Notes: generated from the sequence alone by a model not told the origin. A stretch of 64,000 nt of DNA from Obrimoposthia wandeli (GCA_977020255.1 CDROCS010000777.1:868001-932000), one strand, 5' to 3'. Positions 23,230 through 44,241 are shown, numbered from the stretch's first letter. Numbers and translations are program-made.

Positions 23230-23850
23230 TTTCTTGTATTTTTCAACAATGGACAGTTTATTATATTCATTGTTAAATGGTTTTGAGTATGAATTTCAAA
23301 TATTCCATCACCGTTATTTAGAAACATTTGACCAACCTGCTGTCATCATCATTGTACCCAAGGTGCATATGCAATGTATTGTTCAGGAACCCAAAGGGAA
23401 CTCAAGGCATAATGTGTAATTCAAATATAAAATTTCGACCCGGCCTATTATACATGCTCACTGCACCAGTCTCAAAAAGATCATATAAATAATCGGCTTT
23501 TATGAGAGAATAATATTTTGCTGGTAATTAGAACCTCAAATTATATTCTGGCAGTAGTCAGTAGCCAATGAAGCTTTATTAAATATTCACTTAAACTAGC
23601 CCTTTTCTTTATTTTAAATATAATTCTGAGCTTAGCTTAAAACTTTCTGTAAGCAATTTAATATATAGTCTGGAATATTAAACAGTAAAGAATTTTGAAA
23701 ATCATGTTTTAATGAAATAATTACATTAGTAAGGTATTTTCTCATTAAATAAATCGTTTTGATATAACTGTTGCATGTTATTATCACTTTTTTAATTTGA
23801 CAGTTTCTTGTAATGTTTTCTTTGGGGACGCAACCAATATTTTTCATTGG
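23230..23850 (-). mobile_element. Decayed hAT-related (DUF659-like) element, copy 3, next to the Gypsy insertion
   Basis: 23555-23700 is similar to 17600-17740 (GCCAATG..TTAAATATTCACTT..ACTAGC; TATTAAACAGTAAGAATTTTGAAAAT). Confidence 0.45.
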
Positions 23851-24067
23851 AGTTTCTAAATTAATTATGTTTTCTCAAACATATATGTGTTAAGGTTGAG
23901 AATTAAGAAAATTAAATATTTTAGTTGATTAAATACTAAAATAAAAAAGCCTTGAAAGCAAGGTCGAAAATCAAATTAAAATATTAAGTTGAATTTTAGA
24001 AGTAAAATTAGTGAAATATTAGGGTAAAATTAGGAGGACCACGAAGGTCGTGTATTATGCGAAAATG

Positions 24068-24075
24068 TATAAAAG
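24068..24075 (+). promoter_or_regulatory. Candidate LTR TATA box (TATAAAAG)
   Basis: Consensus TATA. The last ATG before 27271 lies immediately upstream (24065), consistent with a TSS near 24100. Confidence 0.55.
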
Positions 24076-24453
24076 TTAAACTAATTAACCCAAAAGGGAC
24101 AATATCAAAAACAAAAACTTAATTAGAAGAAAAACGGTTAATTACAACCGTCGCTCAAGGATCCCAAAGGTAAGCACTTTTGCGTGCAGTAATTAAGATT
24201 TGTTTTCCAGCTGTCATTGACTGACAGAATCCAAAATCACTAGAAGAAATCGACCAGGAAACCCAAAGCAGCTGCCAGTTGATTGGCAACTAGATTCCTA
24301 CTTAAGAAGGGCCATTTCAGGGAACAAACACAATTTCGGAAGCACTCCGGAATCGACTGAAAACAAGAAATCGACTTCTAGGTAACTTTTAGTGTAAGAA
24401 GTTATAAAAATTGAAATTATCTAGGAAAATTGAAGTGAATACCTGAACTGTAA

Positions 24454-24801
24454 CCAACTGATTAAAGAATTGAGAAACGATTCCAACTGATTAAAGAATT
24501 GAGAAACGATTCCAACTGATTAAAGAATTGAGAAACGATTCCAACTGATTAAAGAATTGAGAAACGATTCCAACTGATTAAAGAATTGAGAAACGATTCC
24601 AACTGATTAAAGAATTGAGAAACGATTCCAACTGATTAAAGAATTGAGAAACGATTCCAACTGATTAAAGAATTGAGAAACGATTCCAACTGATTAAAGA
24701 ATTGAGAAACGATTCCAACTGATTGAAGAATTGAGAAACGATTCCAACTGATTAAAGAATTGAGAAACGATTCCAACTGATTGAAGAATTGAGAAACGAT
24801 T
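24454..24801. repeat. 29-bp tandem repeat x12 inside the LTR (also at ~42478-42825)
   Basis: Unit CCAACTGATT(A/G)AAGAATTGAGAAACGATT; 348 bp = 12 x 29. Confidence 0.95.
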
Positions 24802-24908
24802 CCAACTGATTGAACGATTCTGCCAGGCTCGCAAATACCACATACGGACCCTACACCGGACGTCCCACGAGTTGCTGTAACTGGTAAGCACACAGATTAG
24901 GTCCATTC

Positions 24909-25345
24909 ATTGCCCCTAGTAGGCAATTAGGTTATTTCATTACCCCTAGTTGGTAATTCTACGTTTTTAAAATAATAAGCAAATTCATTACCCCTAGCTG
25001 GTAATTAGGACCTGTGTCTCTTTAACACAATCATTACCCCTAGTTGGTAATTAGGATCGGAACTTTATTCATTGTCCCCAGCGACAATTAGGAAACTTAC
25101 CAGACGTTTTTTCCGTAAGATTCATTGTCCCTAGCTGGCAATTAGGTTCCTTCATTGCCCCTAGTTGGTAATTCGGATAAATATTCATTGTCCCTAGTAG
25201 ACAATTCGGTAAGACTCATTGTCCACTAGCTGACAATTCGATTCGCACATTGTCCGTAGTTGACAATTAGGAGCAAGTTTTATTGTCATCTGGACAATTA
25301 GGATTTTAGGAGATCCCTTGTCTACAGTAGACAATTTGGGTCGAA
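24909..25345 (+). repeat. Array of 12 short stem-loops in the LTR (duplicated in the 3' LTR)
   Basis: ATT(GCC/ACC/GTC)-N5-8-(GGC/GGT/GAC)AAT; most loops resemble CCTAG(T/C)(A/T). Confidence 0.85.
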
Positions 25346-25605
25346 CACACAGAGAGAGTAAGGAACAAAGAAATATTTGGTTAGAGATAAGAAGTAGGAG
25401 CGAAGAAAATTAAGAGAGTTGCGTTATAGATTAACCAACCTGAGTAAGAAGACTAAACCTAAGAAACTTAATCACCTGAACGTAAAATCAATACGTGGTT
25501 CATCCCCACTTCTTGTAGAGACTCACAGAAGTCCTTTAGGAATTTTATCATACTTTTTAGAAATACGTACATAAACGTATTGTGGTGTTAGTTACGTGAA
25601 TTTTG

Positions 25606-25611
25606 AATAAA
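25606..25611 (+). promoter_or_regulatory. Candidate polyadenylation signal AATAAA (functional copy expected in the 3' LTR)
   Basis: AATAAA ~205 nt before the LTR end; position fits an R/U5 border. Confidence 0.45.
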
Positions 25612-25824
25612 CAATTTCCTACATTAGAACAAGTTGTTTTACACCCTTCAGACTAAGAGACATCAAATCAATACCTTCAGATAGTACAAGAGATTAGGCA
25701 ACCATAACACTAAGTAGGCCACGACCAACTTTAAGACCTGCTTCTAATCGAACTCACGTTGGGGCCCTCCGCACACTAAGAGGCTCTATACCAAGTTTCG
25801 TATAGAAACCCCAACATATTAAAG

Positions 25825-25843
25825 TGGTGCCCCGAGTGAGGAT
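25825..25843 (+). other. Primer-binding site complementary to elongator tRNA-Met
   Basis: TGGTGCCCCGAGTGAGGAT, 8 nt after the LTR, matches 18/19 the complement of the animal tRNA-Met(e) 3' end as I recall it (TGGTGCCCCGTGTGAGGAT). Confidence 0.85.
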
Positions 25844-25869
25844 AGCTCGTCGGACACAGCGAATTCACG

Positions 25870-26852
25870 TAGAATAAGTTCAGATAAGTTTTGGATAATT
25901 GAGAATAAGTTTCAGGTAAATAGAATAAGTTCAGATAAGTTGCGGATAATTGAGAATAAGTTTCAGGTAAATAGAATAAGTACAGATATTAAGAATAAGT
26001 TTCAGATATTGAGAATAAGTTTCAGATATTAAGAATAAGTTTCAGATATTGAGAATAAGTTTCAGATAAATTGAGAATAAGTTTCAGATAAATTGAGAAT
26101 AAGTTTCAGCAGAAGAATATAGACAATTGAGAATAAGTTTCAGAAGAAGATATAAGTAAATTGAGTTAAGAATTTGATAAGTTTTAAGAAATCGGGTAGA
26201 TTTGTTCCTCGAAGTTAAGAATTTGATAAGTTTTTGAGAAATCGAGTAGATTTGTTCCTCGAAGTTAAGAATTTGATAAGTGTTAAGAAATCGGGTAGAT
26301 TTGTTCCTCAAAGTTAAGAATTTGATAAGTGTTGAGAAATCGGGTAGATTTGTTCCTCGAAGTTAAGAATTTGATAAGTTTTTGAGAAATCGAGTAGATT
26401 TGTTCCTCGAAGTTAAGAATTTGATAAGTGTTAAGAAATCGGGTAGATTTGTTCCTCGAAGTTAAGAATTTGATAAGTGTTGAGAAATCGGGTAGATTTG
26501 TTCCTCGAAGTTAAGAATTTGATAAGTTTTTGAGAAATCGAGTAGATTTGTTCCTCGAAGTTAAGAATTTGATAAGTGTTAAGAAATCGGGTAGATTTGT
26601 TCCTCGAAGTTAAGAATTTGATAAGTGTTGAGAAGTCGAGTGGATTTGTTCCTCGAGTCAGTAAATTTTATAAGTGAGAATCGAGTGGATTGATACTCGA
26701 AGTAATTAATTGAATAAGTTAAGTCGGGAGACTCTGTCCTCGAACTAATTAAAAAGATAAAATCGTAAGTGAATTTGATAAAGTGAGAATCGAGTGGATT
26801 GATACTCGAAGTAATTAATTGAATAGGTTAAGTCGGGAGACTCTGTCCTCGA
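25870..26852 (+). repeat. Leader tandem repeats: ~20-bp GAGAATAAGTTTCAGATATT units, 49-50-bp unit x10, ~109-bp unit x2
   Basis: Read directly from the sequence; the 49-50-bp units contain TCG(A/G)GTAGATTTGTTCCTCGA. Confidence 0.9.
25913..25972 (+). promoter_or_regulatory. Two candidate major splice donors (CAG|GTAAAT at 25915/16 and 25966/67)
   Basis: Consensus-like 5' splice sites ~70 and ~125 nt after the PBS, the position of retroviral major donors. Confidence 0.5.
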
Positions 26853-27150
26853 ACTAATTAAAGAGATAAAAAGTCGTAAAATAAGAATTGTGAAATAAGA
26901 TAAAAATAATAAGTGAATTGATATCGTAAACGAATACATAATTGATAAGACAACGGATAATAGAAAAGGACCCGCGTATAATACTAGAAGACAAAGTCAG
27001 ATCCCCAAGGAAGAGATAAATAATAATAAAGTTAACCGAATTGAACAGGTTCCCCAAACAGATAACAAAGTAACAGAAAAGACTAGAGTCGAAGAAAACG
27101 TATCAGAAAGAGACGTTGATCAATCAGCGGTTTCAACCGGCAGTTTTAAT

Positions 27151-29631
27151 TTGACTGAATTATTTGGTGACATAGACCAAGAAGAATTTGAAATTGCCAA
27201 TCCAGTAGTGATTGAGGAAGTTCCATTGAATAATATTGCAGAAATAGTTGAAGACGATATAGTTGCAGATATGGCTCAACCAGGAGCTCAAGCAGATATT
27301 AATGCAGGAAATAATGTAGGTGACATGAATGCCGAGCAGTTGGCACAAGCTTTAAATGCGACGTTGAGACCCAATTTTTCAGGATCATTGCAGATTACAA
27401 AGTTTAAAGGAGATGAGGAAAGTATTTGTGACTTCCTCGCAGAATATTCGAGTTGTGCAGATGTTCAAGGATGGAACGATAAAGAAAAATGTATCAGAGT
27501 ACAGGCACATTTAACCGGATTAGCACTTGAAGTGTATAAACATTTGACAGAAGCAGAACGTTTGGACTGGCCAACGTTAGAAAATGCTTTTATTGGAAAA
27601 TTGGTATTAGGAGATTTAGCCAAAGTAAATAAGCGACTCATGAGAGAACGGAAACAGAAACATGATGAAGGCGTGAATGAATACGCGTATGTTTTGAGAA
27701 CCTTGGCCGCAAGAGCGTACCCAAGAAGAATAATGAGAAATCAGGACGGTAATCCTGTAGCTCCAGAAGCACAAGCAGCGGAAAATGACCGGAACCAAAA
27801 TGAAATGGCAGAGGTCTTGTTAGATATATTTAGAGGAGGATTGAAAAAGGATATTAAAGTGTTATTAGCGGTATCGGATACAAATGATTTTGATAACGCC
27901 GTGCGAAAGGCGAGAGAGATCGAGAAAAATATAAAGAATAATGCAGCATTGGCAATCTACGCAATGACTGCAGGTGACGACGATAAGACAAAGGTCTTCG
28001 TGAATAAAACAGAACCGAGTAATTTTCAGAATCGAAATTGTGGACAAAATAAGTTTGAAAAAGTAGATGAATCCAGTAACGGAAATAGAGATAATTTCCG
28101 AAGTAGGAATCGAGATGATTCGAGAGGTAGAAATAATAGTGAGTCTTGGAACAGGAATCGAGATGATTCAAGAGGTAGAAATAATAATGATTCGTGGAAT
28201 AGAAATAGAGATGATTCCAGGAATAGATTTAATAGAGATAATTCAGGAAATCGCCAACCTTGGAGAGGAGACGATAGGAATTATAACGCCAACAGAGGAG
28301 AGCGAAGTGACTCTCGATTTGGAAATAATACAGGAAATAGTGACGGAAGATTCAATAATCGAGGAAGCGGGTTTGAATCGAATTTCCGAAGAAATGATTT
28401 TAGAGGACGCTATGATAATAGACAGAATAGTCGTCGAGTACAGTTCGAAGATGAACAAAATAAGATAGATATTCGAGGGAGAATAATGTGTTACACGTGT
28501 AAACAAATGGGTCACTATTCGAGAGACTGTACGAGAAGTAAAGAGTTCGGAACTAACAGATTTGGAAATAATAATTTCGGTAATAATAATTTTGGAAATA
28601 ATTATAGAGGATATAATTCACCTCCGCCATGGAATAGAGGTGGTGGATATACTCCACAGCCATGGAGACTGAATAATCAGTATACAGATAGACAACAGTC
28701 ACCAGGTAGATATAATAACTATGCAGATAGACAGCAAGGAGCTGAGAGATACAGTAATTACGTAGGACAGCAAGGAGCTGAGAGATATAATAATTCCGGT
28801 AGATATAATAATAATAATGTCGACAAGACAAATAGTCGAGAGAGTTCGCCGAAACCGAAAGGAAATTTTAGTTATGTAAGCGATGACAGTGATAGGAATC
28901 GCGAGACCGAGCTTCGACGCGAAATAGATTTTGAAGATAGTGATAGTAAATTTGAACGAATGTTGGGAATAATTAAAGATTCACCACATACAAAGATGGC
29001 GAATTCATCTACGTTGTCGAAACAAGAGAGAAGTCTACACTCGAGAGAAGAGATGAATGATTTAATGAATAGAATATTAGAAGCGTATGAGACACCAATA
29101 GAGAAAACGTGTAACGCACAACCTATGACTGATCATGTGGAAGCAGCGAGAAATGCTACGAGTATGGAAAATGTAAAAAAGATAATTAGTGAAGCTAAGG
29201 AGACGTTAAATCAACCGTTAGATGAAACGAGTGAAGCTCCAGAAGTTCTGGCCAAATTGCAAACAATTAAAGTGCACCGATTGGAAGAAGTGCGTGCAGA
29301 ATTGGTTAAACATAGTCATGATAACTTGGGTTACAAAGAAGTACCCCGAGGACTACTGAAAGGTTATGGTCGTTATGTACAGAGATCAAACCAAAAAGGA
29401 ACGATGAAAATTTCACTTCGATTAATTTCCGGACAGATAATACATGAAAAACTTAACGTGTATCAAACAATGAAAACGATTCGGAAAAAGTTAGCCGAGA
29501 AACTTGAAATTGATGGAATGAATATGTTGTTCCATTATAAAGGGAGATCACTAGATGATGAGGACGTACCAGTCGAGTTTGGATATCCGATAGGAAATGA
29601 ATTAGAGGAAAAATTGATGTCATCACTGTAG
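27151..29631 (+). CDS. gag: Gag: capsid-like domain, R/N/G-rich region, CCHC knuckle, C-terminal ubiquitin-like domain
   Basis: Retrotransposon-gag-like core (WPTLENAF..YAYVLRTLAARAYP..FRGGLKKDIK) and CYTCKQMGHYSRDC at 28489-28530. First ATG is 27271; the frame is open from 26917. Confidence 0.9.
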   Translation: MTELFGDIDQEEFEIANPVVIEEVPLNNIAEIVEDDIVADMAQPGAQADINAGNNVGDMNAEQLAQALNATLRPNFSGSLQITKFKGDEESICDFLAEYSSCADVQGWNDKEKCIRVQAHLTGLALEVYKHLTEAERLDWPTLENAFIGKLVLGDLAKVNKRLMRERKQKHDEGVNEYAYVLRTLAARAYPRRIMRNQDGNPVAPEAQAAENDRNQNEMAEVLLDIFRGGLKKDIKVLLAVSDTNDFDNAVRKAREIEKNIKNNAALAIYAMTAGDDDKTKVFVNKTEPSNFQNRNCGQNKFEKVDESSNGNRDNFRSRNRDDSRGRNNSESWNRNRDDSRGRNNNDSWNRNRDDSRNRFNRDNSGNRQPWRGDDRNYNANRGERSDSRFGNNTGNSDGRFNNRGSGFESNFRRNDFRGRYDNRQNSRRVQFEDEQNKIDIRGRIMCYTCKQMGHYSRDCTRSKEFGTNRFGNNNFGNNNFGNNYRGYNSPPPWNRGGGYTPQPWRLNNQYTDRQQSPGRYNNYADRQQGAERYSNYVGQQGAERYNNSGRYNNNNVDKTNSRESSPKPKGNFSYVSDDSDRNRETELRREIDFEDSDSKFERMLGIIKDSPHTKMANSSTLSKQERSLHSREEMNDLMNRILEAYETPIEKTCNAQPMTDHVEAARNATSMENVKKIISEAKETLNQPLDETSEAPEVLAKLQTIKVHRLEEVRAELVKHSHDNLGYKEVPRGLLKGYGRYVQRSNQKGTMKISLRLISGQIIHEKLNVYQTMKTIRKKLAEKLEIDGMNMLFHYKGRSLDDEDVPVEFGYPIGNELEEKLMSSL

Positions 29632-29672
29632 GACGTCAAGAGTTAGTAGATAATGAAGGATTAACCGAGATA

Positions 29673-30647
29673 TTGAATTCTGCGTTAGAAATGATAAAAA
29701 CGCCTATAGAAATTTTAGACAGTTCAAGCGAAAGCGGAGATAATGATGTAGCTGAAGTTTGGAACAAGACATCCACACCAGAACCGTACGTAGCTGAATT
29801 ACAAGACATGAATTTAGAAAATGAGTTGACAACTCCAGTGGTTGAGGTGCCACCAGAACCAGATATAATTCCAATCAGACAAGATGAAGTCACGGATACA
29901 GCCAACCAAGTGAGACAAAACGAAACCGTAACACAACTAGTAGGAGAAGACGAAGTCTCCGAGATTGTAGATTTGGATTCACCAATTTGGCATGCCGCAT
30001 ACAAAGATAGACAAGCAGAGCAAATGATGCGACAAAATGAAGAGATTGGCCATGAAGAAGGACCAAGTCAAGAGATACAGTATAATGGTGAAACGTATGA
30101 TCCAGGAGAGAATCAAACTGAGTATCAGTATTTTCGAAGAGGGCCTGGAAGACCTAGAAAAGGTGAAAGTATATTACGAAATGTTCTAACTGCACCACAA
30201 ACTGATGAAGAAAGACATCTAAGTATTGGACAGTTAGCGGCGTCATTAGAGCAGTATAGTGCAGAGAGGAATGAAGATATCAGAGGTGATATGAATTCGG
30301 AAACTCCAAGTAGTAAAGATATACTTACGGGAATTCTCAGGCAAGTGAAGCCGAAGTTGTTCAAAATGTACAGAGATGAAACAACCGATATAACAGACAA
30401 TTTGACTAAAGCAGTCAGATCACAGATGTCTGCAGTAAAGAGAATGACCGCGAATCATGTATACCATGCATCGATAGATAGATTTTATGACGGTGAAGTT
30501 TTAGCGAGATTATGTGGAAACCAGACTACAAATAAAAAGTTAATTACAGCGATCACATATCTATGTTTCCAATTGACGGAACGAACGAGCCAACCTCACG
30601 AAGTCAAACAAGGAATAAATGAAGCGATGTATTTGATCGAGAAGTAA
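29673..30647 (+). CDS. Acidic/AT-hook/putative BEN-domain segment, probably a continuation of Gag in the -1 frame
   Basis: 324-aa ORF in the element's codon style; AT-hook RRGPGRPRKG (30135-30164); frame open from 29601, overlapping the ORF1 end. Confidence 0.75.
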   Translation: MNSALEMIKTPIEILDSSSESGDNDVAEVWNKTSTPEPYVAELQDMNLENELTTPVVEVPPEPDIIPIRQDEVTDTANQVRQNETVTQLVGEDEVSEIVDLDSPIWHAAYKDRQAEQMMRQNEEIGHEEGPSQEIQYNGETYDPGENQTEYQYFRRGPGRPRKGESILRNVLTAPQTDEERHLSIGQLAASLEQYSAERNEDIRGDMNSETPSSKDILTGILRQVKPKLFKMYRDETTDITDNLTKAVRSQMSAVKRMTANHVYHASIDRFYDGEVLARLCGNQTTNKKLITAITYLCFQLTERTSQPHEVKQGINEAMYLIEK

Positions 30648-30673
30648 CTTTCGAAGATCCAAGACTTAAAAAA

Positions 30674-35300: not shown

Positions 35301-38300
35301 TAATTCACATGGGAAAAGAGATATCATGAGAGTCCATTTAATCGACGCTGACACTGAAAAGATAATTTGTCAGATGGACACCAAATACTTTGATGGAAAG
35401 ACAATTGTATGTTGTATACCAGAATCTCACCGATTAGAGACAGATCAAACGGAAGTATCTGTAAGGTTGAGCGTAATAGAAGGATTCCATTCGCCAACCC
35501 ATCCGGAAGTGACTAACAATAAAATCATCAAAGCAACGGCAGAATTACGCATTGACAGCGGATACCGGAAGTGGGAAGCTAAAAATAAAAAGCCACAAAG
35601 AATCAATATGATCCGAGAACAAGTGACCAGCTCAATCCAGCCAAAATATCATGCTGAAATAGTATCATCCGCGCCAAGTGTAATTACATCGATAAACGAC
35701 GAAATTATAATTTTACTAAAAAATCGATGGCCGTCATCAACCGAGATACGAGTAAACTTAATTAATTATGCGAAGACACCGATATCTAAGCTGAATGTTA
35801 CCTATTTTGATGGATTGTCCATCATGGGTAAATTGGAAACAATTGTCATGTGCTATGGAGCACAGTTCCAAGTTGAGATACTTAAAGATAGTGTAATACC
35901 GTATCCGATTCACAAATACGAAGGGGAAATCAACCCAATTATTCTAACACCTTCATTAATTTCAGTTCAGACAGACATACCAGAATACCCTTCGAGCGAG
36001 TCTAGTGAAGACAGCGAACCGGAAAGTAACGATACAGAATCAACAGAATCCGAAGATAACATAATAGAGCGATTCGGAAGAACCATGGAGGTTGAATTCG
36101 CTAAAGAGAACAGAAAAAGACAAAACATAGAATTCGTGAAACAGAATATACAAGAAAGACGAATTAAATCTGCAGAAGAGACCGAGTCGGAAGAAGACTC
36201 AACAAAGGAACAGACATCAGAGACAAAGATGAATATCCCTCCAGCAATACGAATGCTGAGAGGAAAGAAACTGGCAAAACTAACTAACATCGACGACCAG
36301 ATAGAGAAGAGATTAGAAAGACTAAAACTTGAAGAGTCAGAATTAATGCCACCAATGAGTGAGATCATTCCAGGTAAGTTATACCTCGGAAATGTGGAGG
36401 ATGCCACAGATGAAAAGAAACTGTTGGAACAAGGGATAACATATGTGATCAACGTTACAATGAATCACAAATCGCAATATCAGACGATCAGAGCTATGAC
36501 ATTAAGAGTAAAAGACTCAATGGACGCTAATCTTCTCGAATGGTTCGTAGAAACAAACGAAATACTTCACAGAGAACTCCGAAACCAAGGAAAAGTGTTG
36601 GTACATTGTCAGAAAGGAATTTCTCGATCAGCAACCCTAGTATTAGCATATCTAATAAAGACTAGACGAATGCAGGTACTAGAAGCGTTAAAATACCTAC
36701 AGGAGAGAAGAAGTATTGCAAACCCAAATCTTAATTTTTTGGGACAGTTGGCAAATTACCAACTTCTGTTGCAAGAACAAAGACGGATGGACGACATTCC
36801 TGAGGATCCAAAGGAAAAGAATTTCCTCCAAGCATTATCACTGACTGGGTTATTTTTAGCTGGAGTCGACAAAATTACACAGATAATGCCAAAAGTATTT
36901 TTATGTCATCCAGGAGATATAGATACTGCTGGATTAAAGTTCCACAGTATCAACCGAGTAATCAACATTGTTGAAGTCGGAAACGAGATAATTAGTCTGT
37001 GTCAAAATACTGAAGATGACACCACTCGATACATACATGCTTCCAATCGAGAGATAAACGATGCGCAACAACATCTGACGAAATTGACTCAAACCATCCA
37101 AGCTGAAGTCACAGAAGGAAACGGCGTTCTGATATATCAGAAAAAAGGTACAATGTTAGCGCCTACCATAGGTGTATCCTTGTTGGTAGAGTACCATGGT
37201 CACACGCCAGAAGAAGCGATGGTCTACATCAAACAGAATAGACCAAATACGGAATTCAAACCGTTACTCGTTCGAGAAATAGAGAAATACACCGAAAAGA
37301 GGAAGCAACAACGAGAAACAAATGAAGCTACAACAACAGTGCCCAGCTTTCAATACCAAAGATTGCTAGCGATAGGCTTGTTAAGTTGTTTAATGCCGAT
37401 AACGGGAGCACAGGAGATAGGCTCCAACCACGGAAATAGTTCCTGGTTCAACGAAATCCACAATTACACCATACAGTACCATACGCCGGCACTGATGATG
37501 CTATTAGTGTTGTTAGGACTAATTGATGTGTGGATCATCCGAAAATGTCTTCGATCTATGAGAACCGACAGTAAAAGATTTCAGTTTGTAAAGATGAAAA
37601 GACCAAATGGACCAACGAACAAAGTGCTTGTGTATCTAGACGAAAGGATCGAAGATAACATAGTAAATGAAGCGATATTTTACCCACAAAACAGAATACT
37701 GAAGCAATTCCGAATAGATTATGAAGCTGACCGACAACGCACACTTGACCAAATATCAACAACATTCGCCGGATGCAAGCGAAGAAAACGAGTTGTAAAG
37801 GAAATACAAAAAGATGCTGATACAAAAGGACCAACGTATATATTCAACGGCGATGTCATCAAAACACGTGAGTATGGAAGTAAGAGAGTGATAATTGAAA
37901 CGATGGAAGGACATAAAACATGCTTGTCCGCCAAAAATGGATTCGGAAAGTTGACGATACAAGGTAAACCAGTACAGTTGATTATCGGAAGAGATGGAAT
38001 CGAGGAGATGTCAAAACAACGACAAACAACAAAACGAACCAATCAGAAACAGATATCTCTCAAACGATTGATAATTAAAACCCTTTGCAAAAGGTCAGTC
38101 AAGGCCCTGTGCACCGTTGCACAAGGATTGATTTATGGAGTAGTAATTGGATTGGTACTGCAAGCCATGCCAACCAGTAAAGCCGAATTGATGACACTAT
38201 CCGAATATAATTTACATTTGAGAAATCTAGACAACACCCTAGAAATAATCAAGACATCCCACAGTAGAGCCGTGATGATCATGTGTGTAAAAGGATGTCC

Positions 38301-40026
38301 AGGACGAATGTGTATAGTCCCAGCAACCGAAATGATAACACTTAATGGACATTATGGAGTTAGTGTTGTCACATGTGAAGACTACATATTTGGACAAACT
38401 AAAATAGTGCTTCTCAGTGACACGTCCAACCAAAGTGCACACAAATTTAAGATATTAACCATCAAGAGTAAAGGAATACCAGCAGTACGTTATGGTATTC
38501 TAGAATTAGTTAATCCAATACTGGCACTGATCATTGGATTTATAATATTAATATTACTCATCTTGTTTTGTTGTTCAAAGATAGAGTCGAGATCAAAAAA
38601 GAAACGTCATGATCTCGCAAGACGAACAGGTCAAATGAACTTACAGAAATTCAACACAATCATACCAAGACCACCATTTCTAGATGAACCAGCACCAGAG
38701 TACCAGCCAACGATATATGAACACATAGAGGAAAGACCGTACTATATGAGTAATTTGACTTGTTTCATTGAAGTTCCTGAGTTTAGGAATCGAACGATCA
38801 TAGGAATCATGCTGATCGTACAAATCACCACTACCAAGGCTAGTTATGAGATCATGATCAGTAAATGGAGACAAGACGTAATACGGGCAATATACATAGA
38901 AATTCCCTTACTAAAAACAAATCACGTAGTAGACATTCATCTACAGACGTCAGCAACTGACAATATCGATCAGAAATTGTATGTCATCCGACAGGTCAGA
39001 ATAAAAATCGACCAAAATACACCCGTTTACAATTTAATATTATTGCATCATGAAAGAGTGTTATACCTACGGATAACAATATCAAAGAGGAAGCGGATTA
39101 TCCAAAGTATCCGAACAAAGTCATTAATATTACCTAGAGATGAGCGCATCTGGAAAATTGTTGACAGGATTATGATCACAGGTAGACGACGTAAAGCCGT
39201 ATGGAATTCCGTTAGGATATTTTTCAGATTGCTAGAAACTGACAGCGTGACAGTAATGTGTCCCAACCCAGATGGCGTAATCAGATTCGAAATCCAAAGC
39301 CAAATGTTAGTACCACATTTTAACACAGAATGTCTGTGTAATCGAATTGCCAGTAATTCTACAGAGACCTCGACCATAATCATGATAATAACAGGTGAAA
39401 TATTCTACATAACTCTAAGATACCAGAACCGTCGATTTCGCAGATACGGTATAAGTATCAAACCCAGGAAAATCATTCCCAGAAGACCAATCCTAGTCAA
39501 AAAGAAGGCAAAGGTAATCGAAAGTAAACGACATTCCAAGAAACCGACAGTGATCAAAACAAAGACAGAAGCGAAAGAAAAAGAGTCCAATCCCAGAAAC
39601 CAAAGTACAATTATTAAGAGGACAAGAGTGAGGGGAACGATCCCACTAGATCCCAAACATCATTTCCAATCCAAAATAATAATACCTGTTCCATCAGAAA
39701 CAAAACACCCAAATCCCCGAATTTTTAGAAAATCGGACATAATACATGGAAACCGATCAAAACCCATGGAAATATCATTCGAACCGACAAACAACAAAAT
39801 GAAGTATGATTATAAAACATCAGACAGCGGAATAACAGCAGTCAATGCCCTAATTGGAATGGCCGTAGTGTCAACAGCGGTGGTTCTACTTACAATCGTG
39901 TGCGTAAAAGGCAGTCAAGTATGCCCAGGAATACGACGAAAATGCGAAGGATTGCGATGCTGTGACACACCCATCATGGAGGAAGTGGAATTACGACCCT
40001 TACCTCCACCTCCCATCAAGATATGA
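32308..40026 (+). CDS. pol: Pol (RT, RNase H, integrase) fused to ~1730 aa of accessory domains (3 Ig-like repeats, DSP, pseudo-DSP, membrane region)
   Basis: YIDD at 32608; RNase H TDAS..EKECLAI..YTDH; IN HHCC, D-D-E core and GPY; no stop until 40026. Confidence 0.97.
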   Translation: MRFCIDFRELNKITRKDVYPLPRIEEMLDKLGNSDYFTTLDLQSGYWQIEIEEEDKHKTAFSCGDGLYECEKMPFGLTGAPATFQRCMNFVLASCANTMVYIDDIIIFSKTFEEHLKNLEVVFKRLENAKLKVKPTKCVWAKERVTFLGHIVSKEGIRPDPAKIEKVKAHLAPKTVKEIQSFLGLANYYRRFVEHFSDIATPLRKLTRKDEKFIWGEEAQQAFEHLKERLIKAPILAFPDINRQFILMTDASNYAVGAVLGQEDDEGREHVIAYASRGLNRAERGYSVIEKECLAIVYSCRQYRHYLLGQKVFLYTDHKPLQFLYKHRDEMSRLNRWFLKLAEFDLEIRYRTGKSNGNADCLSRLTNVDEKGNIIPEEDETNDQKGEANLLTILLKTGKIDKEIIKEQKEDEELSLIKELLVKGDLNDEMTKKYSIKEGILYIVNNVGKIVVVIPKSLKTAVMIQYHDGTLGGHLSGRKTIARIKEKYHWDGMEDDIKQWCKQCKVCLTRKDTGTRTKVPLKPMPVPLAPMEFTAMDILGPLRESSKGNKYVIVFTDYMTRWVEAYPMQNQKAETIAQILVEEIIFRYGVPRKLLTDQGKNFTGEVIKAVSKIFGIMKLQTSPYHPQTDGLVERFNKTLCMMVQSYCSDKQEDWDKYLPSCLYAYRNSVREATGHTPFYLMYLRQNNMPMDLEWTEPTSQYLETEQYIVVMKERLQDAWTKAGLKLKFNQEGYKEQYDKKAKPHEFRVGDQVMIFYPVIEPGLSFKLHRPYKGPYKVIQTTSTNLKVINEENRNKEPMIVHANRCKLVPNKDNASRYELRSQKSKPNTNTIKLTRMVSDRNYINMMTSGSEKKPARIGMLRMKCQEEKEVIRHIAPQEILEEDEEIIVVFEKTQPTDVAKEVIVKDALTNEFLCELRVSYYDGNTLVASLYQNSNVFTTEKVIIEITLTPNIVAWQNYDSTEAGLASQEEKEPAGGHILHGTPKRLKQEYHDVIMVLRNSHGKRDIMRVHLIDADTEKIICQMDTKYFDGKTIVCCIPESHRLETDQTEVSVRLSVIEGFHSPTHPEVTNNKIIKATAELRIDSGYRKWEAKNKKPQRINMIREQVTSSIQPKYHAEIVSSAPSVITSINDEIIILLKNRWPSSTEIRVNLINYAKTPISKLNVTYFDGLSIMGKLETIVMCYGAQFQVEILKDSVIPYPIHKYEGEINPIILTPSLISVQTDIPEYPSSESSEDSEPESNDTESTESEDNIIERFGRTMEVEFAKENRKRQNIEFVKQNIQERRIKSAEETESEEDSTKEQTSETKMNIPPAIRMLRGKKLAKLTNIDDQIEKRLERLKLEESELMPPMSEIIPGKLYLGNVEDATDEKKLLEQGITYVINVTMNHKSQYQTIRAMTLRVKDSMDANLLEWFVETNEILHRELRNQGKVLVHCQKGISRSATLVLAYLIKTRRMQVLEALKYLQERRSIANPNLNFLGQLANYQLLLQEQRRMDDIPEDPKEKNFLQALSLTGLFLAGVDKITQIMPKVFLCHPGDIDTAGLKFHSINRVINIVEVGNEIISLCQNTEDDTTRYIHASNREINDAQQHLTKLTQTIQAEVTEGNGVLIYQKKGTMLAPTIGVSLLVEYHGHTPEEAMVYIKQNRPNTEFKPLLVREIEKYTEKRKQQRETNEATTTVPSFQYQRLLAIGLLSCLMPITGAQEIGSNHGNSSWFNEIHNYTIQYHTPALMMLLVLLGLIDVWIIRKCLRSMRTDSKRFQFVKMKRPNGPTNKVLVYLDERIEDNIVNEAIFYPQNRILKQFRIDYEADRQRTLDQISTTFAGCKRRKRVVKEIQKDADTKGPTYIFNGDVIKTREYGSKRVIIETMEGHKTCLSAKNGFGKLTIQGKPVQLIIGRDGIEEMSKQRQTTKRTNQKQISLKRLIIKTLCKRSVKALCTVAQGLIYGVVIGLVLQAMPTSKAELMTLSEYNLHLRNLDNTLEIIKTSHSRAVMIMCVKGCPGRMCIVPATEMITLNGHYGVSVVTCEDYIFGQTKIVLLSDTSNQSAHKFKILTIKSKGIPAVRYGILELVNPILALIIGFIILILLILFCCSKIESRSKKKRHDLARRTGQMNLQKFNTIIPRPPFLDEPAPEYQPTIYEHIEERPYYMSNLTCFIEVPEFRNRTIIGIMLIVQITTTKASYEIMISKWRQDVIRAIYIEIPLLKTNHVVDIHLQTSATDNIDQKLYVIRQVRIKIDQNTPVYNLILLHHERVLYLRITISKRKRIIQSIRTKSLILPRDERIWKIVDRIMITGRRRKAVWNSVRIFFRLLETDSVTVMCPNPDGVIRFEIQSQMLVPHFNTECLCNRIASNSTETSTIIMIITGEIFYITLRYQNRRFRRYGISIKPRKIIPRRPILVKKKAKVIESKRHSKKPTVIKTKTEAKEKESNPRNQSTIIKRTRVRGTIPLDPKHHFQSKIIIPVPSETKHPNPRIFRKSDIIHGNRSKPMEISFEPTNNKMKYDYKTSDSGITAVNALIGMAVVSTAVVLLTIVCVKGSQVCPGIRRKCEGLRCCDTPIMEEVELRPLPPPPIKI
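36355..36775 (+). other. Dual-specificity phosphatase domain (catalytic motif intact) within the polyprotein
   Basis: SEIIPGKLYLG..GITYVINVT..VLVHCQKGISRSATLVLAYL..RRSIANPNLNFLGQL; HCxxGxxRS at 36604-36630. Confidence 0.95.
36874..37290 (+). other. Second DSP-fold domain lacking the catalytic Cys/Arg (pseudophosphatase)
   Basis: ITQIMPKVFL..INRVINIV..GNGVLIYQKKGTMLAPTIGVSLLVEYHGHTPEEAMVYIKQNRP parallels domain 1, with the HCxxGxxR motif degenerate. Confidence 0.8.
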
Positions 40027-40149
40027 TGAGTCAGAGGAGGTTGTAGATAAATTAGTGTGTGAAATATGTAGAAATATCTAGAAGCGATTGTACAAATAGT
40101 AGCAGTATATAAAACTCATGTAGAAATTAATCATCATCATGTATTTAGA

Positions 40150-40449
40150 ATGGCCGAAGAATGCCCAATATGTTTAGAAGATCTAACCGAACGAAGAACA
40201 AGACCCGAAACCTGCAACCATTTACACCACGAGGAATGTTTATCGACATGGATCAGAACTTATGGACAGTTCGGACACCCAACATACCCTCGTTGCCCTA
40301 TATGCAGAAGACAATTCGCAAGATTCGTCATGTTAGAACCCAACCAAAGGGATGTATATGTACAGGTGGTATTCTGCTGGAAGAATTTCGGAGAGTGTTG
40401 GTGTTATTACTGTTTGTCAGATCGACAAAATCAGACCACTTTTGTGTAA
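40150..40449 (+). CDS. Small RING-H2 protein 1 with C-terminal Cys cluster
   Basis: CPIC..CNHLHHEEC..W..CPIC, then CWKNFGECWCYYC. Confidence 0.9.
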   Translation: MAEECPICLEDLTERRTRPETCNHLHHEECLSTWIRTYGQFGHPTYPRCPICRRQFARFVMLEPNQRDVYVQVVFCWKNFGECWCYYCLSDRQNQTTFV

Positions 40450-40509
40450 AGATCACACAACCACCAGTCCTCAATCGAGCCCAAATTCAACATCAACCCT
40501 CCCACAGTA

Positions 40510-40815
40510 ATGTCTGGAGAATGTTCCATCTGCTACGAGAGCATCGTGGACTTCTACACCAAGCCCAACAACTGCGACCACCTTTTCCACGTCGAATGCC
40601 TCGAGACGTGGATCCCCATCGCAAACAGCAACAACCCCCTCGACTTCCCAACCTGCCCGATGTGCAGAGCGACCTTCTCAGTACACTACGTGTACAACCA
40701 AGACATCCTCCAAGCAGTGGTACCCATCGTACACTGCTGGAAAACCATCTGCGATTGCTGGTGCTCGTTCTGCGTGGAAGAGCGAAGCACAGGCCAGCCC
40801 AATCCCCAACAATAA
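40510..40815 (+). CDS. Small RING-H2 protein 2 (paralogue of protein 1)
   Basis: CSIC..CDHLFHVEC..W..CPMC, then CWKTICDCWCSFC. Confidence 0.9.
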   Translation: MSGECSICYESIVDFYTKPNNCDHLFHVECLETWIPIANSNNPLDFPTCPMCRATFSVHYVYNQDILQAVVPIVHCWKTICDCWCSFCVEERSTGQPNPQQ

Positions 40816-41148
40816 TCGAAGGTAACTTTCTGACTTGAACATGACATCATGAACTACCCTGTGTATCGCATACCGCGATAAATTAGCTACCATAATTGTA
40901 ATCATAATTATATAATCTTGTGAACTGTAAATTGACCATTACCATTTTTATGTATGATGTTTAACTGAAATTGTAATTATTATACTGAATTTCTAAAAAG
41001 ACAATTTTTATGCTTAGTGTGAATGCGTAAACATGCCTAAAATCGAAACAAAACTCGGTAGGATTAGATAACTAAGGATTCATTTTGAAACAAAATTTAA
41101 ATTAACGATGAGAACGGTGAACCCCAAATTGAAAGGAGTCATTTTCTC

Positions 41149-41649
41149 ATGCAGATGTTGTGCTCCGTATGCATGGAGAAGATTTGGGCGGCATCAGCAT
41201 CCCCTGTCGGCTGCCGCCACAAGTTCCACGAATCCTGCCTATATACTTGGGCCCGACTTCGACCCGGACAAGTCAATTGCCCCTATTGCCGCACTCCCTT
41301 CGCGGAATGGACACTACAGTGTCGAGGGCGCCACAAGGGCACCCATTCGCTCACCAGCTGTATTGGTGGCGAGCACTGCCAGTGCCCCGACTGTATCGCG
41401 CGCCGTCGCGATGCAAAACTCGCCCTCCGCGAGAAATACCGGTCAACCCGTGACCCCCGCTCATGGCAGCGTGGCCGTCAAATATGGCTCAAGAATCGCG
41501 GAGTACACGGGCGGTACACGACCATTTTTCACCCGAGCCAACACCTCACCATGCGCCAGCAGATGATACTGTACGATGGCGGCCCACCATCGTATCCAGA
41601 ACTACCACTGGAGCAGGTCTTGCTGTTTTTGAGAGACCGGAACAATTGA
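41149..41649 (+). CDS. Small RING-H2 protein 3 with basic C-terminal extension (true start may be ATG 41155)
   Basis: CSVC..CRHKFHESC..W..CPYC, then CIGGEHCQCPDC. Confidence 0.9.
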   Translation: MQMLCSVCMEKIWAASASPVGCRHKFHESCLYTWARLRPGQVNCPYCRTPFAEWTLQCRGRHKGTHSLTSCIGGEHCQCPDCIARRRDAKLALREKYRSTRDPRSWQRGRQIWLKNRGVHGRYTTIFHPSQHLTMRQQMILYDGGPPSYPELPLEQVLLFLRDRNN

Positions 41650-41912
41650 CAAATCCCTGACAATCACCCTTGATCCTTTCCCTTGTATAATTTTTTGTTG
41701 TCGTAGTAATAATGTATAAATTGAGACATGCTCCAACTTATGCATTATAATTTCCCACTAAAAAACCGGGTTTTGGAAAATTTTTTTTTGGGCATGTTTG
41801 TTGAGGTTGAATGATTGATTTTGTAGGGATGAACCTAAAATCAACAGCCAAAGGCTTATTAAGTAAAATCGATACGTTCCGGGGACGTAACTTTTTTGGA
41901 ACCCCCGAGGTA

Positions 41913-43839
41913 TGTTAAGGTTGAGAATTAAGAAAATTAAATATTTTAGTTGATTAAATACTAAAATAAAAAAGCCTTGAAAGCAAGGTCGAAAATCAAA
42001 TTAAAATATTAAGTTGAATTTTAGAAGTAAAATTAGTGAAATATTAGGGTAAAATTAGGAGGACCACGAAGGTCGTGTATTATGCGAAAATGTATAAAAG
42101 TTAAACTAATTAACCCAAAAGGGACAATATCAAAAACAAAAACTTAATTAGAAGAAAAACGGTTAATTACAACCGTCGCTCAAGGATCCCAAAGGTAAGC
42201 ACTTTTGCGTGCAGTAATTAAGATTTGTTTTCCAGCTGTCATTGACTGACAGAATCCAAAATCACTAGAAGAAATCGACCAGGAAACCCAAAGCAGCTGC
42301 CAGTTGATTGGCAACTAGATTCCTACTTAAGAAGGGCCATTTCAGGGAACAAACACAATTTCGGAAGCACTCCGGAATCGACTGAAAACAAGAAATCGAC
42401 TTCTAGGTAACTTTTAGTGTAAGAAGTTATAAAATTGAAATTATCTAGGAAAATTGAAGTGAATACCTGAACTGTAACCAACTGATTAAAGAATTGAGAA
42501 ACGATTCCAACTGATTAAAGAATTGAGAAACGATTCCAACTGATTAAAGAATTGAGAAACGATTCCAACTGATTAAAGAATTGAGAAACGATTCCAACTG
42601 ATTAAAGAATTGAGAAACGATTCCAACTGATTAAAGAATTGAGAAACGATTCCAACTGATTAAAGAATTGAGAAACGATTCCAACTGATTAAAGAATTGA
42701 GAAACGATTCCAACTGATTAAAGAATTGAGAAACGATTCCAACTGATTGAAGAATTGAGAAACGATTCCAACTGATTAAAGAATTGAGAAACGATTCCAA
42801 CTGATTGAAGAATTGAGAAACGATTCCAACTGATTGAACGATTCTGCCAGGCTCGCAAATACCACATACGGACCCTACACCGGACGTCCCACGAGTTGCT
42901 GTAACTGGTAAGCACACAGATTAGGTCCATTCATTGCCCCTAGTAGGCAATTAGGTTATTTCATTACCCCTAGTTGGTAATTCTACGTTTTTAAAATAAT
43001 AAGCAAATTCATTACCCCTAGCTGGTAATTAGGACCTGTGTCTCTTTAACACAATCATTACCCCTAGTTGGTAATTAGGATCGGAACTTTATTCATTGTC
43101 CCCAGCGACAATTAGAAACTTACCAGACGTTTTTCCGTAAGATTCATTGTCCCTAGCTGGCAATTAGGTTCCTTCATTGCCCCTAGTTGGTAATTCGGAT
43201 AAATATTCATTGTCCCTAGTAGACAATTCGGTAAGACTCATTGTCCACTAGCTGACAATTCGATTCGCACATTGTCCGTAGTTGACAATTAGGAGCAAGT
43301 TTTATTGTCATCTGGACAATTAGGATTTTAGGAGATCCCTTGTCTACAGTAGACAATTTGGGTCGAACACACAGAGAGAGTAAGGAACAAAGAAATATTT
43401 GGTTAGAGATAAGAAGTAGGAGCGAAGAAAATTAAGAGAGTTGCGTTATAGATTAACCAACCTGAGTAAGAAGACTAAACCTAAGAAACTTAATCACCTG
43501 AACGTAAAATCAATACGTGGTTCATCCCCACTTCTTGTAGAGACTCACAGAAGTCCTTTAGGAATTTTATCATACTTTTTAGAAATACGTACATAAACGT
43601 ATTGTGGTGTTAGTTACGTGAATTTTGAATAAACAATTTCCTACATTAGAACAAGTTGTTTTTACACCCTTCAGACTAAGAGACATCAAATCAATACCTT
43701 CAGATAGTACAAGAGATTAGGCAACCATAACACTAAGTAGGCCACGACCAACTTTAAGACCTGCTTCTAATCGAACTCACGTTGGGGCCCTCCGCACACT
43801 AAGAGGCTCTATACCAAGTTTCGTATAGAAACCCCAACA
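41913..43839 (+). repeat. 3' LTR (1927 bp)
   Basis: Copy of 23888-25816 with four 1-bp homopolymer-length differences found by eye. Confidence 0.98.
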
Positions 43840-43872
43840 TATGAAACTCTTTTTTATTTGGTTTATATTGTT

Positions 43873-44241
43873 CTAAGATCCAAATAATATAGTCTCAGAT
43901 TTATGTTCATTCCTCCTCCAAAATCTTAATTTCATCCATATAGCTATTTCAATACAAACATTTTCCATTTCAGAAAATGTGATTTCATAGTCATCAGAAT
44001 CAAAAGCAATATAAAGTTGTGCATCATCAACATAAAGGTGAAAATGAATAGAATATTTCCTTATAATCATTACGATTAACGGAGTATAAATATAAAATAA
44101 GATTGGACCAAGAATAGAACCCTGGGGAATATAGAACACAGAATCTGATACTGTGCCATCAATTATAACAGATTGTTTAAGCAAAAGTAAATAATTTTTA
44201 ATCGAACTCAGCTTCTTTCCATTTACTTGAAATATTTCCAA
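43873..44241 (-). pseudogene. Non-LTR (L2/CR1-type) reverse transcriptase fragment
   Basis: PQGSILGPILFYIY, HLYVDDAQLY and WMK..N..KSE motifs. Confidence 0.85.

What the first reader, a model, noticed from the sequence alone, without database searches (positions are those of the whole stretch)
23888..43839. Giant, young Ty3/Gypsy element carrying a virus-like set of host-manipulation domains
A structurally complete ~20-kb LTR element encodes, beyond Gag/Pol, a Ubl, an IAP-like BIR-RING, three Ig-like repeats, a DSP plus pseudo-DSP, several membrane segments and three RING-H2 ORFs (seen in sequence). IAPs, phosphatases and RING E3 ligases are the accessory classes large DNA viruses use against apoptosis and innate signalling (established: baculovirus IAP, vaccinia VH1, herpesvirus ICP0). 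I infer a retroelement behaving like a complex virus that rewires ubiquitin and phospho-signalling. From memory, unverified, planarian giant 'Burro' gypsy elements were reported with AT-hook and BIR domains, so part of this may be known. The phosphatase pair, Ubl, Ig-like repeats and RING-H2 trio are the parts I cannot place in any described element.
Basis: partly seen in the sequence, partly recalled or inferred. Interest (0 to 1): 0.95.

Follow-up and report, generated by a model that had tools for sequence, protein, structure and literature searches.

The report
Burro-like giant retroelement with phosphatase cargo
This is a real, very recently inserted 20-kb Ty3/gypsy retroelement of the already described "Burro-like" giant lineage, which has no envelope gene but carries cell-death, ubiquitin and MAP-kinase-phosphatase domains; several of these were not found in any relative or paper searched here.

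Summary
Window 23888-43839 is a complete LTR element. Its two ~1.93-kb LTRs (TG..CA) differ only by four one-base homopolymer indels, and it has a 4-bp TATG target duplication. It encodes gag (CCHC), a ubiquitin-like domain, an IAP-type RING, protease, RT, RNase H and integrase. A ~1750-aa post-integrase tail holds three divergent all-beta repeats, an MKP/DUSP10-like phosphatase with an intact active-site motif, a Cys/Arg-less second phosphatase domain and four hydrophobic segments. Three paralogous RING-H2 ORFs follow. Two calls stay soft: the BIR is below threshold, and "Ig-like" is only a weak fold resemblance.

The closest RT-IN relatives (55-57 %) are giant metagenomic polyproteins with the published Burro architecture: gag, Ubl, Bcl-2-like, in-frame env, PR, RT, IN. 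The Ubl, BIR, Bcl-2-like domain and the "meddling with apoptosis and ubiquitin" idea are therefore already in the literature.

What differs here:
- There is no env.
- There is an IAP-type RING.
- The phosphatase pair, the repeats and the RING-H2 trio have no counterpart in 84 related loci or in the protein searches.
- Two of the three RING-H2 ORFs are compositionally foreign.

The gag-to-pol reading frame changes three times. With a single copy I cannot tell whether these changes are programmed, mutational or assembly noise. Function is inferred, not shown. Verdict: a new variant of a known kind.

The parts
23884..23887 (+). left target-site duplication TATG
   Evidence: same four bases at 43840-43843
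23888..25816 (+). 5' LTR (1929 nt, TGTT...AACA), with a 29-bp x12.3 tandem array at 24454-24811 and 30/95-bp arrays at 25111-25287
25825..25841 (+). PBS-like stretch beginning TGG, eight bases inside the LTR end
   Evidence: read directly; the matching tRNA was not identified (no tRNA gene in the window)
25870..26871 (+). leader filled with tandem arrays (20-bp x~11, 49-bp x10, 109-bp x2)
26917..40026 (+). gag-to-pol coding region, given as one part: open throughout but in four consecutive frame segments (three frame changes, each to the -1 frame; no internal stop within any segment). The last segment alone is 2591 codons
28489..28533 (+). gag CCHC zinc knuckle; the capsid-like part upstream is 25-29 % identical to gag of the Burro-like relatives
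29416..29565 (+). ubiquitin-like domain at the C-end of the gag segment
30309..30600 (+). Bcl-2-like segment (bounds approximate), homologous to the pre-env region of three relatives; the part that holds the GGW (BH2-like) motif in relatives is not present
30650..30820 (+). BIR-like zinc module (sub-threshold; bounds approximate)
31103..31234 (+). IAP-type RING (zf-C3HC4_3)
31340..31633 (+). retroviral-type aspartic protease
32311..34725 (+). reverse transcriptase (Pfam match from 32311), RNase H (32950-33339), integrase zinc domain (33667-33843), integrase core (33895-34185) and C-terminal integrase motif (to 34725)
34933..35985 (+). three divergent ~110-aa all-beta repeats with a shared Y-[YF]-D-G core
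36379..36762 (+). dual-specificity phosphatase domain 1 of MKP/DUSP10 type; general-acid Asp and HCxxGxxR motif present
36868..37320 (+). dual-specificity phosphatase domain 2, lacking the catalytic Cys and Arg (pseudophosphatase); 21 % identical to domain 1
37483..39915 (+). C-terminal ~880 aa with four hydrophobic segments (37483-37551, 38104-38160, 38491-38589, 39829-39915), a signal-peptide-like stretch before the first, N-x-S/T sites and basic stretches; no homologue found
40072..40449 (+). RING-H2 ORF R1 (stop-to-stop bounds; ATG just before the first zinc ligand); composition like the rest of the element
40450..40815 (+). RING-H2 ORF R2, 37 % identical to R1; GC 53 %, GC3 0.74
41101..41649 (+). 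RING-H2 ORF R3, 30-34 % identical to R1 and R2; GC 56 %, GC3 0.63
41913..43839 (+). 3' LTR (1927 nt)
43840..43843 (+). right target-site duplication TATG

Best explanation
This is a very young insertion of a giant Ty3/gypsy (Metaviridae) LTR retroelement from the lineage that includes the planarian Burro elements.

Like its relatives, it encodes between gag and protease a set of small regulatory modules: a ubiquitin-like domain, a Bcl-2-like segment and a BIR-like zinc module.

Unlike them:
- It has no in-frame envelope (fusion glycoprotein) gene.
- It has an IAP-type RING.
- Its post-integrase tail has grown to ~1750 aa and holds three beta repeats, an MKP-type phosphatase domain with an intact active-site motif, a catalytically dead copy of that domain and several membrane-spanning segments.
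- Three small RING-H2 genes sit in front of the 3' LTR.

Most likely mode of action (inferred, not shown): the polyprotein is cut by the element's own protease, and the released modules act in the host cell during replication. The Bcl-2-like and IAP-like parts would block cell death. The RING domains would act as ubiquitin ligases. The MKP-type phosphatase would remove activating phosphates from JNK/p38-type stress kinases, with the dead copy acting as a substrate-binding or regulatory partner. The hydrophobic segments would tether part of the tail to membranes.

Shown: the anatomy, the family placement, and the nearest cellular relatives of the RING and the phosphatase. Inferred: processing, expression and every effect on the host.
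For: Element structure.

Core and accessory domains.

Family placement:
- RT-IN is 55-57 % identical over 99-100 % of its length to 3000-4000-aa unnamed metagenomic polyproteins, against <=41 % over comparable coverage (up to 49 % over partial alignments) for all named arthropod, plant and algal gypsy proteins.
- These relatives have gag-CCHC, Ubl, a Bcl-2 hit, Monjiviricetes-type fusion glycoprotein, ankyrin, PR, RT, RH, IN in one or two ORFs. This is the architecture published for Burro (PMC6431247).
- gag, the Ubl region and PR are also homologous.
- The second frame segment matches the relatives' pre-env profile at E 1.7e-10. That region hits Pfam Bcl-2 (E 0.0015) and only Bcl-xL/Bcl-2 chains in the PDB (E 0.02).

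Long residence of the cargo in the lineage:
- The phosphatase pair, repeats and C-tail have the same base composition and GC3 as RT-IN.
- The two phosphatase domains are only 21 % identical, and the three RING-H2 ORFs only 30-37 %. All remain open and keep their zinc ligands, or in DSP1 the catalytic motif.
- A 2591-codon open frame cannot arise by chance in 38 % GC DNA.

Nearest relatives of the cargo: DSP1 is closest to animal DUSP10/MKP-5 (44-46 %). The RING is closest to cIAP/XIAP.
Against: - Only one copy is available. No second copy or fragment is in the window, and none appeared in the protein or contig collections. Conservation across copies and purifying selection are therefore untested.
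- The LTRs have no substitutions, so open frames in this copy say nothing by themselves about current selection.
- The gag-to-pol region changes frame three times, whereas most of the closest relatives are continuous from gag through pol. This copy may not make a full polyprotein.
- BIR and Bcl-2-like calls are weak. The Bcl-2-like model had pLDDT 50 and was not used.
- The phosphatase lacks the N-terminal kinase-docking domain of true MKPs, so its substrate is a guess.
- I could not compare it with named Burro sequences or identify the host.
Confidence: 0.6

Rival explanations
1. The cargo is passenger DNA. Pieces of host (or other) genes were picked up by template switching or recombination into one lineage or one copy, and are carried without use. 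The element is a defective dead-end copy.
For: - None of 84 related loci (579 kb) has the phosphatase pair, repeats, C-tail, BIR-RING or RING-H2 ORFs.
- No long protein in the databases has this tail.
- R2 and R3 have GC3 0.63-0.74 in an element with GC3 0.25-0.38, as expected for recent, not yet adapted acquisitions.
- There are three frame changes in gag-to-pol.
Against: - The phosphatase pair, repeats and C-tail are compositionally indistinguishable from RT-IN.
- The duplicated domains have diverged to 21-37 % identity while staying open and keeping ligands and the active site. This needs a long period of constraint.
- The tail is fused in frame to integrase over 1750 codons.
Confidence: 0.2
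2. It is an endogenous retrovirus-like agent in which the lost Monjiviricetes-type env has been functionally replaced by the membrane-spanning C-terminal tail, so the element still makes enveloped particles.
For: The tail has a signal-peptide-like stretch, N-x-S/T sites, four hydrophobic segments and a C-terminal anchor followed by a short Cys- and Pro-rich end. The env of the relatives is missing.
Against: - There is no sequence similarity to any fusion protein family.
- Most relatives that do have env also carry a post-integrase tail with one to three hydrophobic segments, so such a tail is not an env substitute in them.
- Long basic, probably disordered stretches in the last 400 aa do not look like an ectodomain.
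Confidence: 0.1
3. The 20-kb unit is an assembly or nesting artefact. The tail and/or the RING-H2 block would belong to another element or a host gene that lies inside the element, or was joined to it by mis-assembly.
For: Composition jumps sharply at R2 and R3. The indel-only differences between the LTRs suggest a noisy long-read assembly.
Against: - One pair of LTRs with a perfect 4-bp duplication encloses everything.
- No further long direct repeats, second LTR pair or extra RT/IN lie inside.
- Integrase runs into the tail without a stop.
- R1, which has the element's own composition, is a paralogue of R2 and R3.
Confidence: 0.05

Closest known systems
Burro / GYPSM1 giant gypsy-like LTR retrotransposons of planarians (Jurka 2007; Grohme et al. 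2018; Arkhipova & Yushenova 2019, PMC6431247)
   Same: - Ty3/gypsy core.
- gag with CCHC, followed by a ubiquitin/SUMO-like domain, a BCL2-like motif and a BIR before the protease.
- Tandem-repeat arrays.
- Domains that point to apoptosis and ubiquitination.
- The nearest RT-IN relatives found here (55-57 %) have exactly this architecture.
   Different: - 20 kb instead of >30 kb.
- No in-frame env.
- No ankyrin, MATH or dUTPase hit.
- An IAP-type RING.
- A post-integrase tail with beta repeats, an MKP-type phosphatase and a pseudophosphatase.
- Three RING-H2 ORFs.
- Three frame changes where most of the closest relatives have one long ORF.

Cellular IAPs (cIAP1/2, XIAP) and baculovirus IAPs
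   Same: A C-terminal RING of the zf-C3HC4_3 type, closest to cIAP1/2 and XIAP (E 3e-11), preceded by a BIR-like zinc module.
   Different: The BIR is below every threshold and has a one-residue longer spacer. The module is a segment of a retroelement polyprotein directly upstream of the protease.
MAP kinase phosphatases, DUSP10/MKP-5 group
   Same: The catalytic domain is 44-46 % identical to animal DUSP10-like proteins. The general-acid Asp and the HCxxGxSRS loop are present.
   Different: There is no rhodanese-like kinase-docking domain. It is followed by a Cys/Arg-less paralogue and is embedded in a pol polyprotein.
Complex retroviruses and foamy-like fish endogenous retroviruses with accessory ORFs
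   Same: Small accessory ORFs lie between pol and the 3' LTR. The genome is enlarged by regulatory genes.
   Different: The element belongs to Metaviridae, not Retroviridae. The accessory ORFs are RING-H2 proteins, and there is no env.

Membership tests
Ty3/gypsy (Metaviridae) LTR retrotransposon | Two direct LTRs ending TG...CA, flanked by a 4-6-bp target duplication | tested here: met
Ty3/gypsy (Metaviridae) LTR retrotransposon | Domain order gag(CCHC)-PR-RT-RNase H-IN | tested here: met
Ty3/gypsy (Metaviridae) LTR retrotransposon | Primer-binding site complementary to a host tRNA 3' end, and a polypurine tract before the 3' LTR | tested here: inconclusive
   A TGG-initiated stretch is present, but no host tRNA was available to match. 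No clear purine run lies directly before the 3' LTR.
Burro-like giant gypsy lineage | RT-IN groups with Burro-type giant polyproteins | tested here: met
   55-57 % identity to polyproteins with the published Burro architecture, against <=41 % over comparable coverage (up to 49 % over partial alignments) to all others. Named Burro sequences themselves were not available.
Burro-like giant gypsy lineage | Ubiquitin/SUMO-like and BCL2-like modules between gag and protease | tested here: met
   Ubl. Bcl-2-like: (weak, and without the BH2-like end).
Burro-like giant gypsy lineage | Fusion-glycoprotein (env) region in frame between gag and protease | tested here: not met
   A profile of 18 relatives' env regions finds nothing in any frame segment. 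No Pfam hit.
Burro-like giant gypsy lineage | One very long gag-pol ORF | tested here: inconclusive
   Three frame changes, all to the -1 frame. One of the three overlaps has an in-phase slippery heptamer, and two hold a homopolymer of five or more. The cause cannot be decided from one copy.
IAP family | At least one BIR domain (C-x2-C-x16-H-x6-C zinc fold) | tested here: inconclusive
   Partial Pfam match E 0.016, below cut-off. The spacer is 17 residues, not 16. No PDB hit.
IAP family | C-terminal RING of the IAP type | tested here: met
MAP kinase phosphatases (typical DUSPs) | DSP catalytic domain with Asp, Cys and Arg | tested here: met
MAP kinase phosphatases (typical DUSPs) | N-terminal rhodanese-like MAPK-binding domain | tested here: not met
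   No rhodanese hit upstream of the phosphatase domain; an acidic, Ser-rich linker lies there instead.
Bcl-2 family | Helical bundle with BH1 and BH2 motifs | tested here: inconclusive
   The profile with relatives hits only Bcl-xL/Bcl-2 over BH1-BH2 (E 0.02). Our segment ends before the relatives' GGW. The model had pLDDT 50.
Immunoglobulin-like fold (the three repeats) | Beta-sandwich with a significant structural match to Ig-like domains | tested here: inconclusive
   Five-strand all-beta model, pLDDT 69. Best neighbours are Ig, TIG/IPT and filamin-type domains, TM <= 0.49, none with E <= 0.001.

The most novel reading that the evidence does not exclude
This would be a retroelement lineage that has kept, over a long time, a working MAP-kinase phosphatase with a pseudophosphatase partner fused to its integrase, plus a family of its own RING-H2 ubiquitin ligases. 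Two of those ligases would have come recently from a GC-rich foreign source. I did not find a phosphatase-bearing LTR retroelement described in the literature searches I could run, so this may be the first. It would be an env-less branch of the Burro lineage that manipulates stress-kinase signalling as well as cell death.
Probability: 0.3. Interest if true: 0.75.

Novelty: new variant of a known kind. Interest (0 to 1): 0.55.

Why it matters
Giant gypsy elements of flatworms are already suspected of interfering with apoptosis and ubiquitination. This element would extend that cargo to phospho-signalling: an MKP-type phosphatase with a dead partner, plus a private set of RING ligases. It also shows that the lineage can drop its envelope gene while enlarging its regulatory load. 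If other copies keep these domains under constraint, it would be a clear case of a retrotransposon evolving the accessory-gene strategy of large DNA viruses. It would also be a natural source of minimal, polyprotein-embedded regulators of cell death and stress kinases. If they do not, it is a record of how readily such elements pick up host domains.

Tried and rejected
- **Other copies.** I found none in the window by blastn or tblastx. There was no exact-protein record. JGI metagenomes and IMG/VR held no close relative of the tail or of RT-IN.
- **Tail homologues.** The word-based search of the phosphatase region among long proteins gave only an Anopheles slingshot-like phosphatase. The all-against-library HMMER search of 1200 aa of the tail gave only cellular DSP domains. 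Its 150 listed hits are all phosphatases, so weaker matches to the repeats or the first two hydrophobic segments would be hidden.
- **RING-H2 origin.** R2 had no homologue sharing words.
- **Env.** A profile of 18 relatives' fusion-glycoprotein regions found nothing.
- **Tail versus relatives' tails.** The relatives' tails are homologous to each other but not detectably to this one. The one exception is a weak match of the beta repeat to P0029 (E 8.6e-5 among 120 sequences).
- **Bcl-2-like structure.** The model was too poor to search with.
- **Host identification.** There were no Rfam hits, no tRNAs and no host exons in the flanks. The AT-rich flanks (29-31 % GC) fit a planarian but do not prove it.
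- **Literature.** No paper combined gypsy or an LTR retrotransposon with a dual-specificity phosphatase. Grohme et al. 2018 was not held.
- **Rejected ideas.** VH1-like or ICP0-like ancestry is rejected, because no viral hit was returned. A nested second element is rejected, because there is no second LTR pair or RT.

Full report
**1. The observation**

Two direct repeats of 1929 and 1927 nt lie at 23888-25816 and 41913-43839. They begin TGTT and end AACA. The four bases TATG flank both outer ends. A global alignment of the two LTRs shows no substitution and four one-base indels, all in homopolymer runs. The insertion is therefore very young. The only differences are of the kind that long-read assemblies, or replication slippage, produce.

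A TGG-initiated PBS-like stretch lies eight bases inside the 5' LTR. The leader that follows is filled with tandem arrays, and the LTR holds a 29-bp x12 array. No clear polypurine run precedes the 3' LTR. The internal region is A-rich with 34-40 % GC, against 29-31 % in the flanks.

**2. Coding content**

The plus strand is open from 26917 to 40026, but in four consecutive frame segments, each in the -1 frame relative to the one before. That makes three frame changes. No segment has an internal stop.

Pfam and PDB searches on each segment separately give the following.
- A CCHC knuckle in gag.
- A ubiquitin-like domain at the end of the gag segment. It is weak alone. As a profile with two relatives it is clear, hitting ubiquitin, SUMO1, NEDD8 and ISG15.
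- A BIR-like module that stays below threshold.
- A RING whose nearest solved relatives are cIAP1, cIAP2 and XIAP.
- Aspartic protease, RT, RNase H and integrase.

After the integrase, the last segment runs on for about 1750 residues.
- Three divergent repeats of about 110 aa share a Y-[YF]-D-G core.
- An acidic linker follows.
- Next is a DSPc domain with the general-acid Asp and the HCxxGxSRS loop.
- A second DSPc domain has lost both Cys and Arg and is 21 % identical to the first.
- The last ~880 residues hold four hydrophobic segments, a signal-peptide-like stretch, N-x-S/T sites and long basic stretches.

Three RING-H2 ORFs lie downstream. They are paralogues, 30-37 % identical. The first two lie in the same frame as the end of pol. 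They are separated by stop codons, and each has its own ATG just before the first zinc ligand.

The model of one repeat is all-beta (pLDDT 69). Its nearest folds are Ig, TIG and filamin-type sandwiches, but none is significant. "Ig-like" is therefore plausible and unproven.

**3.

The C-terminal half of the second frame segment matches a profile of the region just upstream of env in three relatives (E 1.7e-10). In one of those relatives that region hits Pfam Bcl-2 (E 0.0015). The joint profile hits only Bcl-xL and Bcl-2 chains in the PDB, over BH1-BH2 (E about 0.02). Our segment ends before the GGW motif that the relatives have. The structure model was too poor to use. I call this a Bcl-2-like segment at moderate-to-low confidence.

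**4. Relatives**

The RT-IN part is 55-57 % identical over its whole length to unnamed 3000-4000-aa proteins from ENA and JGI metagenome contigs. All named gypsy proteins stay at or below 41 % over comparable coverage; a few reach 49 % over partial alignments.

These relatives carry gag-CCHC, Ubl, sometimes a Bcl-2 hit, a 650-aa Monjiviricetes-type fusion glycoprotein, ankyrin repeats, PR, RT, RH and IN in one or two ORFs. This is the architecture that Arkhipova and Yushenova describe for the planarian Burro elements, down to the order Ubi2/SUMO-like, BCL2, env, PR (PMC6431247). Gag, the Ubl region and the protease are homologous as well.

I therefore place the element in the Burro-like lineage. 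Two caveats apply. I could not compare it with named Burro sequences. The host is not identified: there are no RNA genes or host exons in the window, and the AT-rich flanks fit a planarian without proving it.

**5. What is not shared**

- A profile of 18 env regions finds nothing in this element, so env is absent.
- None of 84 related loci (579 kb, about a dozen of them Burro-like at 50 % identity or more) encodes the BIR-RING module, the repeats, the phosphatase pair, the C-tail or a RING-H2 ORF at tblastn E <= 1e-3.
- One relative (P0029) has a single weak copy of the beta repeat in its own tail.
- Most relatives do have a post-integrase tail of 300-1350 aa with one to three hydrophobic segments, one of them near the C-end. 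Those tails are homologous to each other and not detectably to ours. A membrane-anchored tail looks like a lineage habit. The content of this one is its own.
- Searches of 5.8 and 1.84 billion proteins returned only cellular phosphatases for the tail and nothing for R2.

**6. Origin and age of the cargo**

DSP1 is closest to animal DUSP10/MKP-5-type catalytic domains (44-46 %) and lacks their kinase-docking domain.

The phosphatase pair, the repeats and the C-tail have the same base composition and GC3 (0.35-0.38) as RT-IN. The duplicated domains have diverged deeply while staying open and keeping ligands or the active site. Both facts argue for long residence under constraint in the lineage.

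By contrast, R2 and R3 have 53-56 % GC and GC3 of 0.63-0.74, while their paralogue R1 looks like the rest of the element. I have no explanation for this beyond recent acquisition or exchange with a GC-rich source.

**7. The frame changes**

Most of the closest relatives are continuous from gag through pol; this copy is not. All three changes go the same way. One of the three short overlaps holds an in-phase canonical slippery heptamer, where about 0.08 would be expected by chance. Two hold a homopolymer of five or more, where about 0.5 would be expected. The LTR pair shows that one-base homopolymer differences are the only kind of difference in this region.

Programmed frameshifting, real mutation and assembly noise all remain possible. 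Only other copies or accurate reads can decide.

I give counts only and list gag-to-pol as one part.

**8. Declaration of a possible slip**

Before I had reason to regard the frame changes as possible breaks, open-frame bounds that bracket them to within 22-58 nt were printed by the ORF listing and by my scripts. I also copied them into notebook entry 1. One search printed the letters of one heptamer as well. No repaired, joined, consensus or ancestral sequence was built.

**9. Mechanism and verdict**

The best reading is an env-less branch of the Burro-like giant gypsy lineage whose polyprotein and small ORFs deliver regulators of three host systems:
- cell death (Bcl-2-like segment, IAP-like BIR-RING);
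- ubiquitination (Ubl, four RINGs);
- stress-kinase signalling (MKP-type phosphatase with a pseudophosphatase partner).

The anatomy and placement are shown. Processing, expression and any effect on the host are inferred.

The general idea is already published for Burro, so the finding is not categorically new. The phosphatase pair, the repeats, the RING-H2 trio and the loss of env make it a new variant of a known kind. It is worth following up once the host genome's other copies can be examined.

Noticed in passing
window 40450-40815 and 41101-41649: RING-H2 ORFs R2 and R3 have GC 53-56 % and GC3 0.63-0.74. Their paralogue R1 and every other coding part of the element have GC 34-40 % and GC3 0.25-0.38, and the flanks have 29-31 % GC. 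They look compositionally foreign, and no homologue was found. The GC-rich stretch also opens long spurious alternative-frame ORFs (40149-40835, 41072-41563).
   Followed up: partly
window 5386-6030 (+): Remnant of a piggyBac-type transposase (Pfam DDE_Tnp_1_7, E 1.5e-12, C-terminal third only) in the left flank.
   Followed up: no
window 43876-44256 (-): A decayed reverse-transcriptase fragment (RVT_1, E 2e-7) starts 37 nt to the right of the 3' LTR on the opposite strand. The element may have landed in or next to an older retroelement. An 80-codon open stretch on the same strand abuts the left end (23635-23874) but has no Pfam hit.
   Followed up: partly
window 1651-1946: A 100-bp x3 tandem array, 96 % matching.
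   Followed up: no
window 58000-64000: This stretch has higher GC (35-39 %) and strong positive GC skew, with several 100-120-codon open stretches on the plus strand (59256-59615, 59903-60229, 60382-60708) and no Pfam hit. It may be another repeat or element.
   Followed up: no
L002 (ENA ERZ25039515 contig_128603), L003, L004 (JGI 3300027940 Ga0209893_1000075): Burro-like relatives on metagenome contigs carry further unannotated ORFs after pol: 459, 453 and 187 aa in L002, the last with a weak SUMO/ubiquitin-like hit; 222 and 434 aa in L004. Several relatives have a second aspartic-protease domain after the integrase. One JGI sample holds at least five such contigs.
   Followed up: partly
P0122 (Palaemon carinicauda, 931 aa), P0126 (Carassius carassius, 724 aa): These cellular proteins have two or three tandem DSP domains, each matching DSP1. 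Tandem phosphatase domains therefore also exist outside this element.
   Followed up: no
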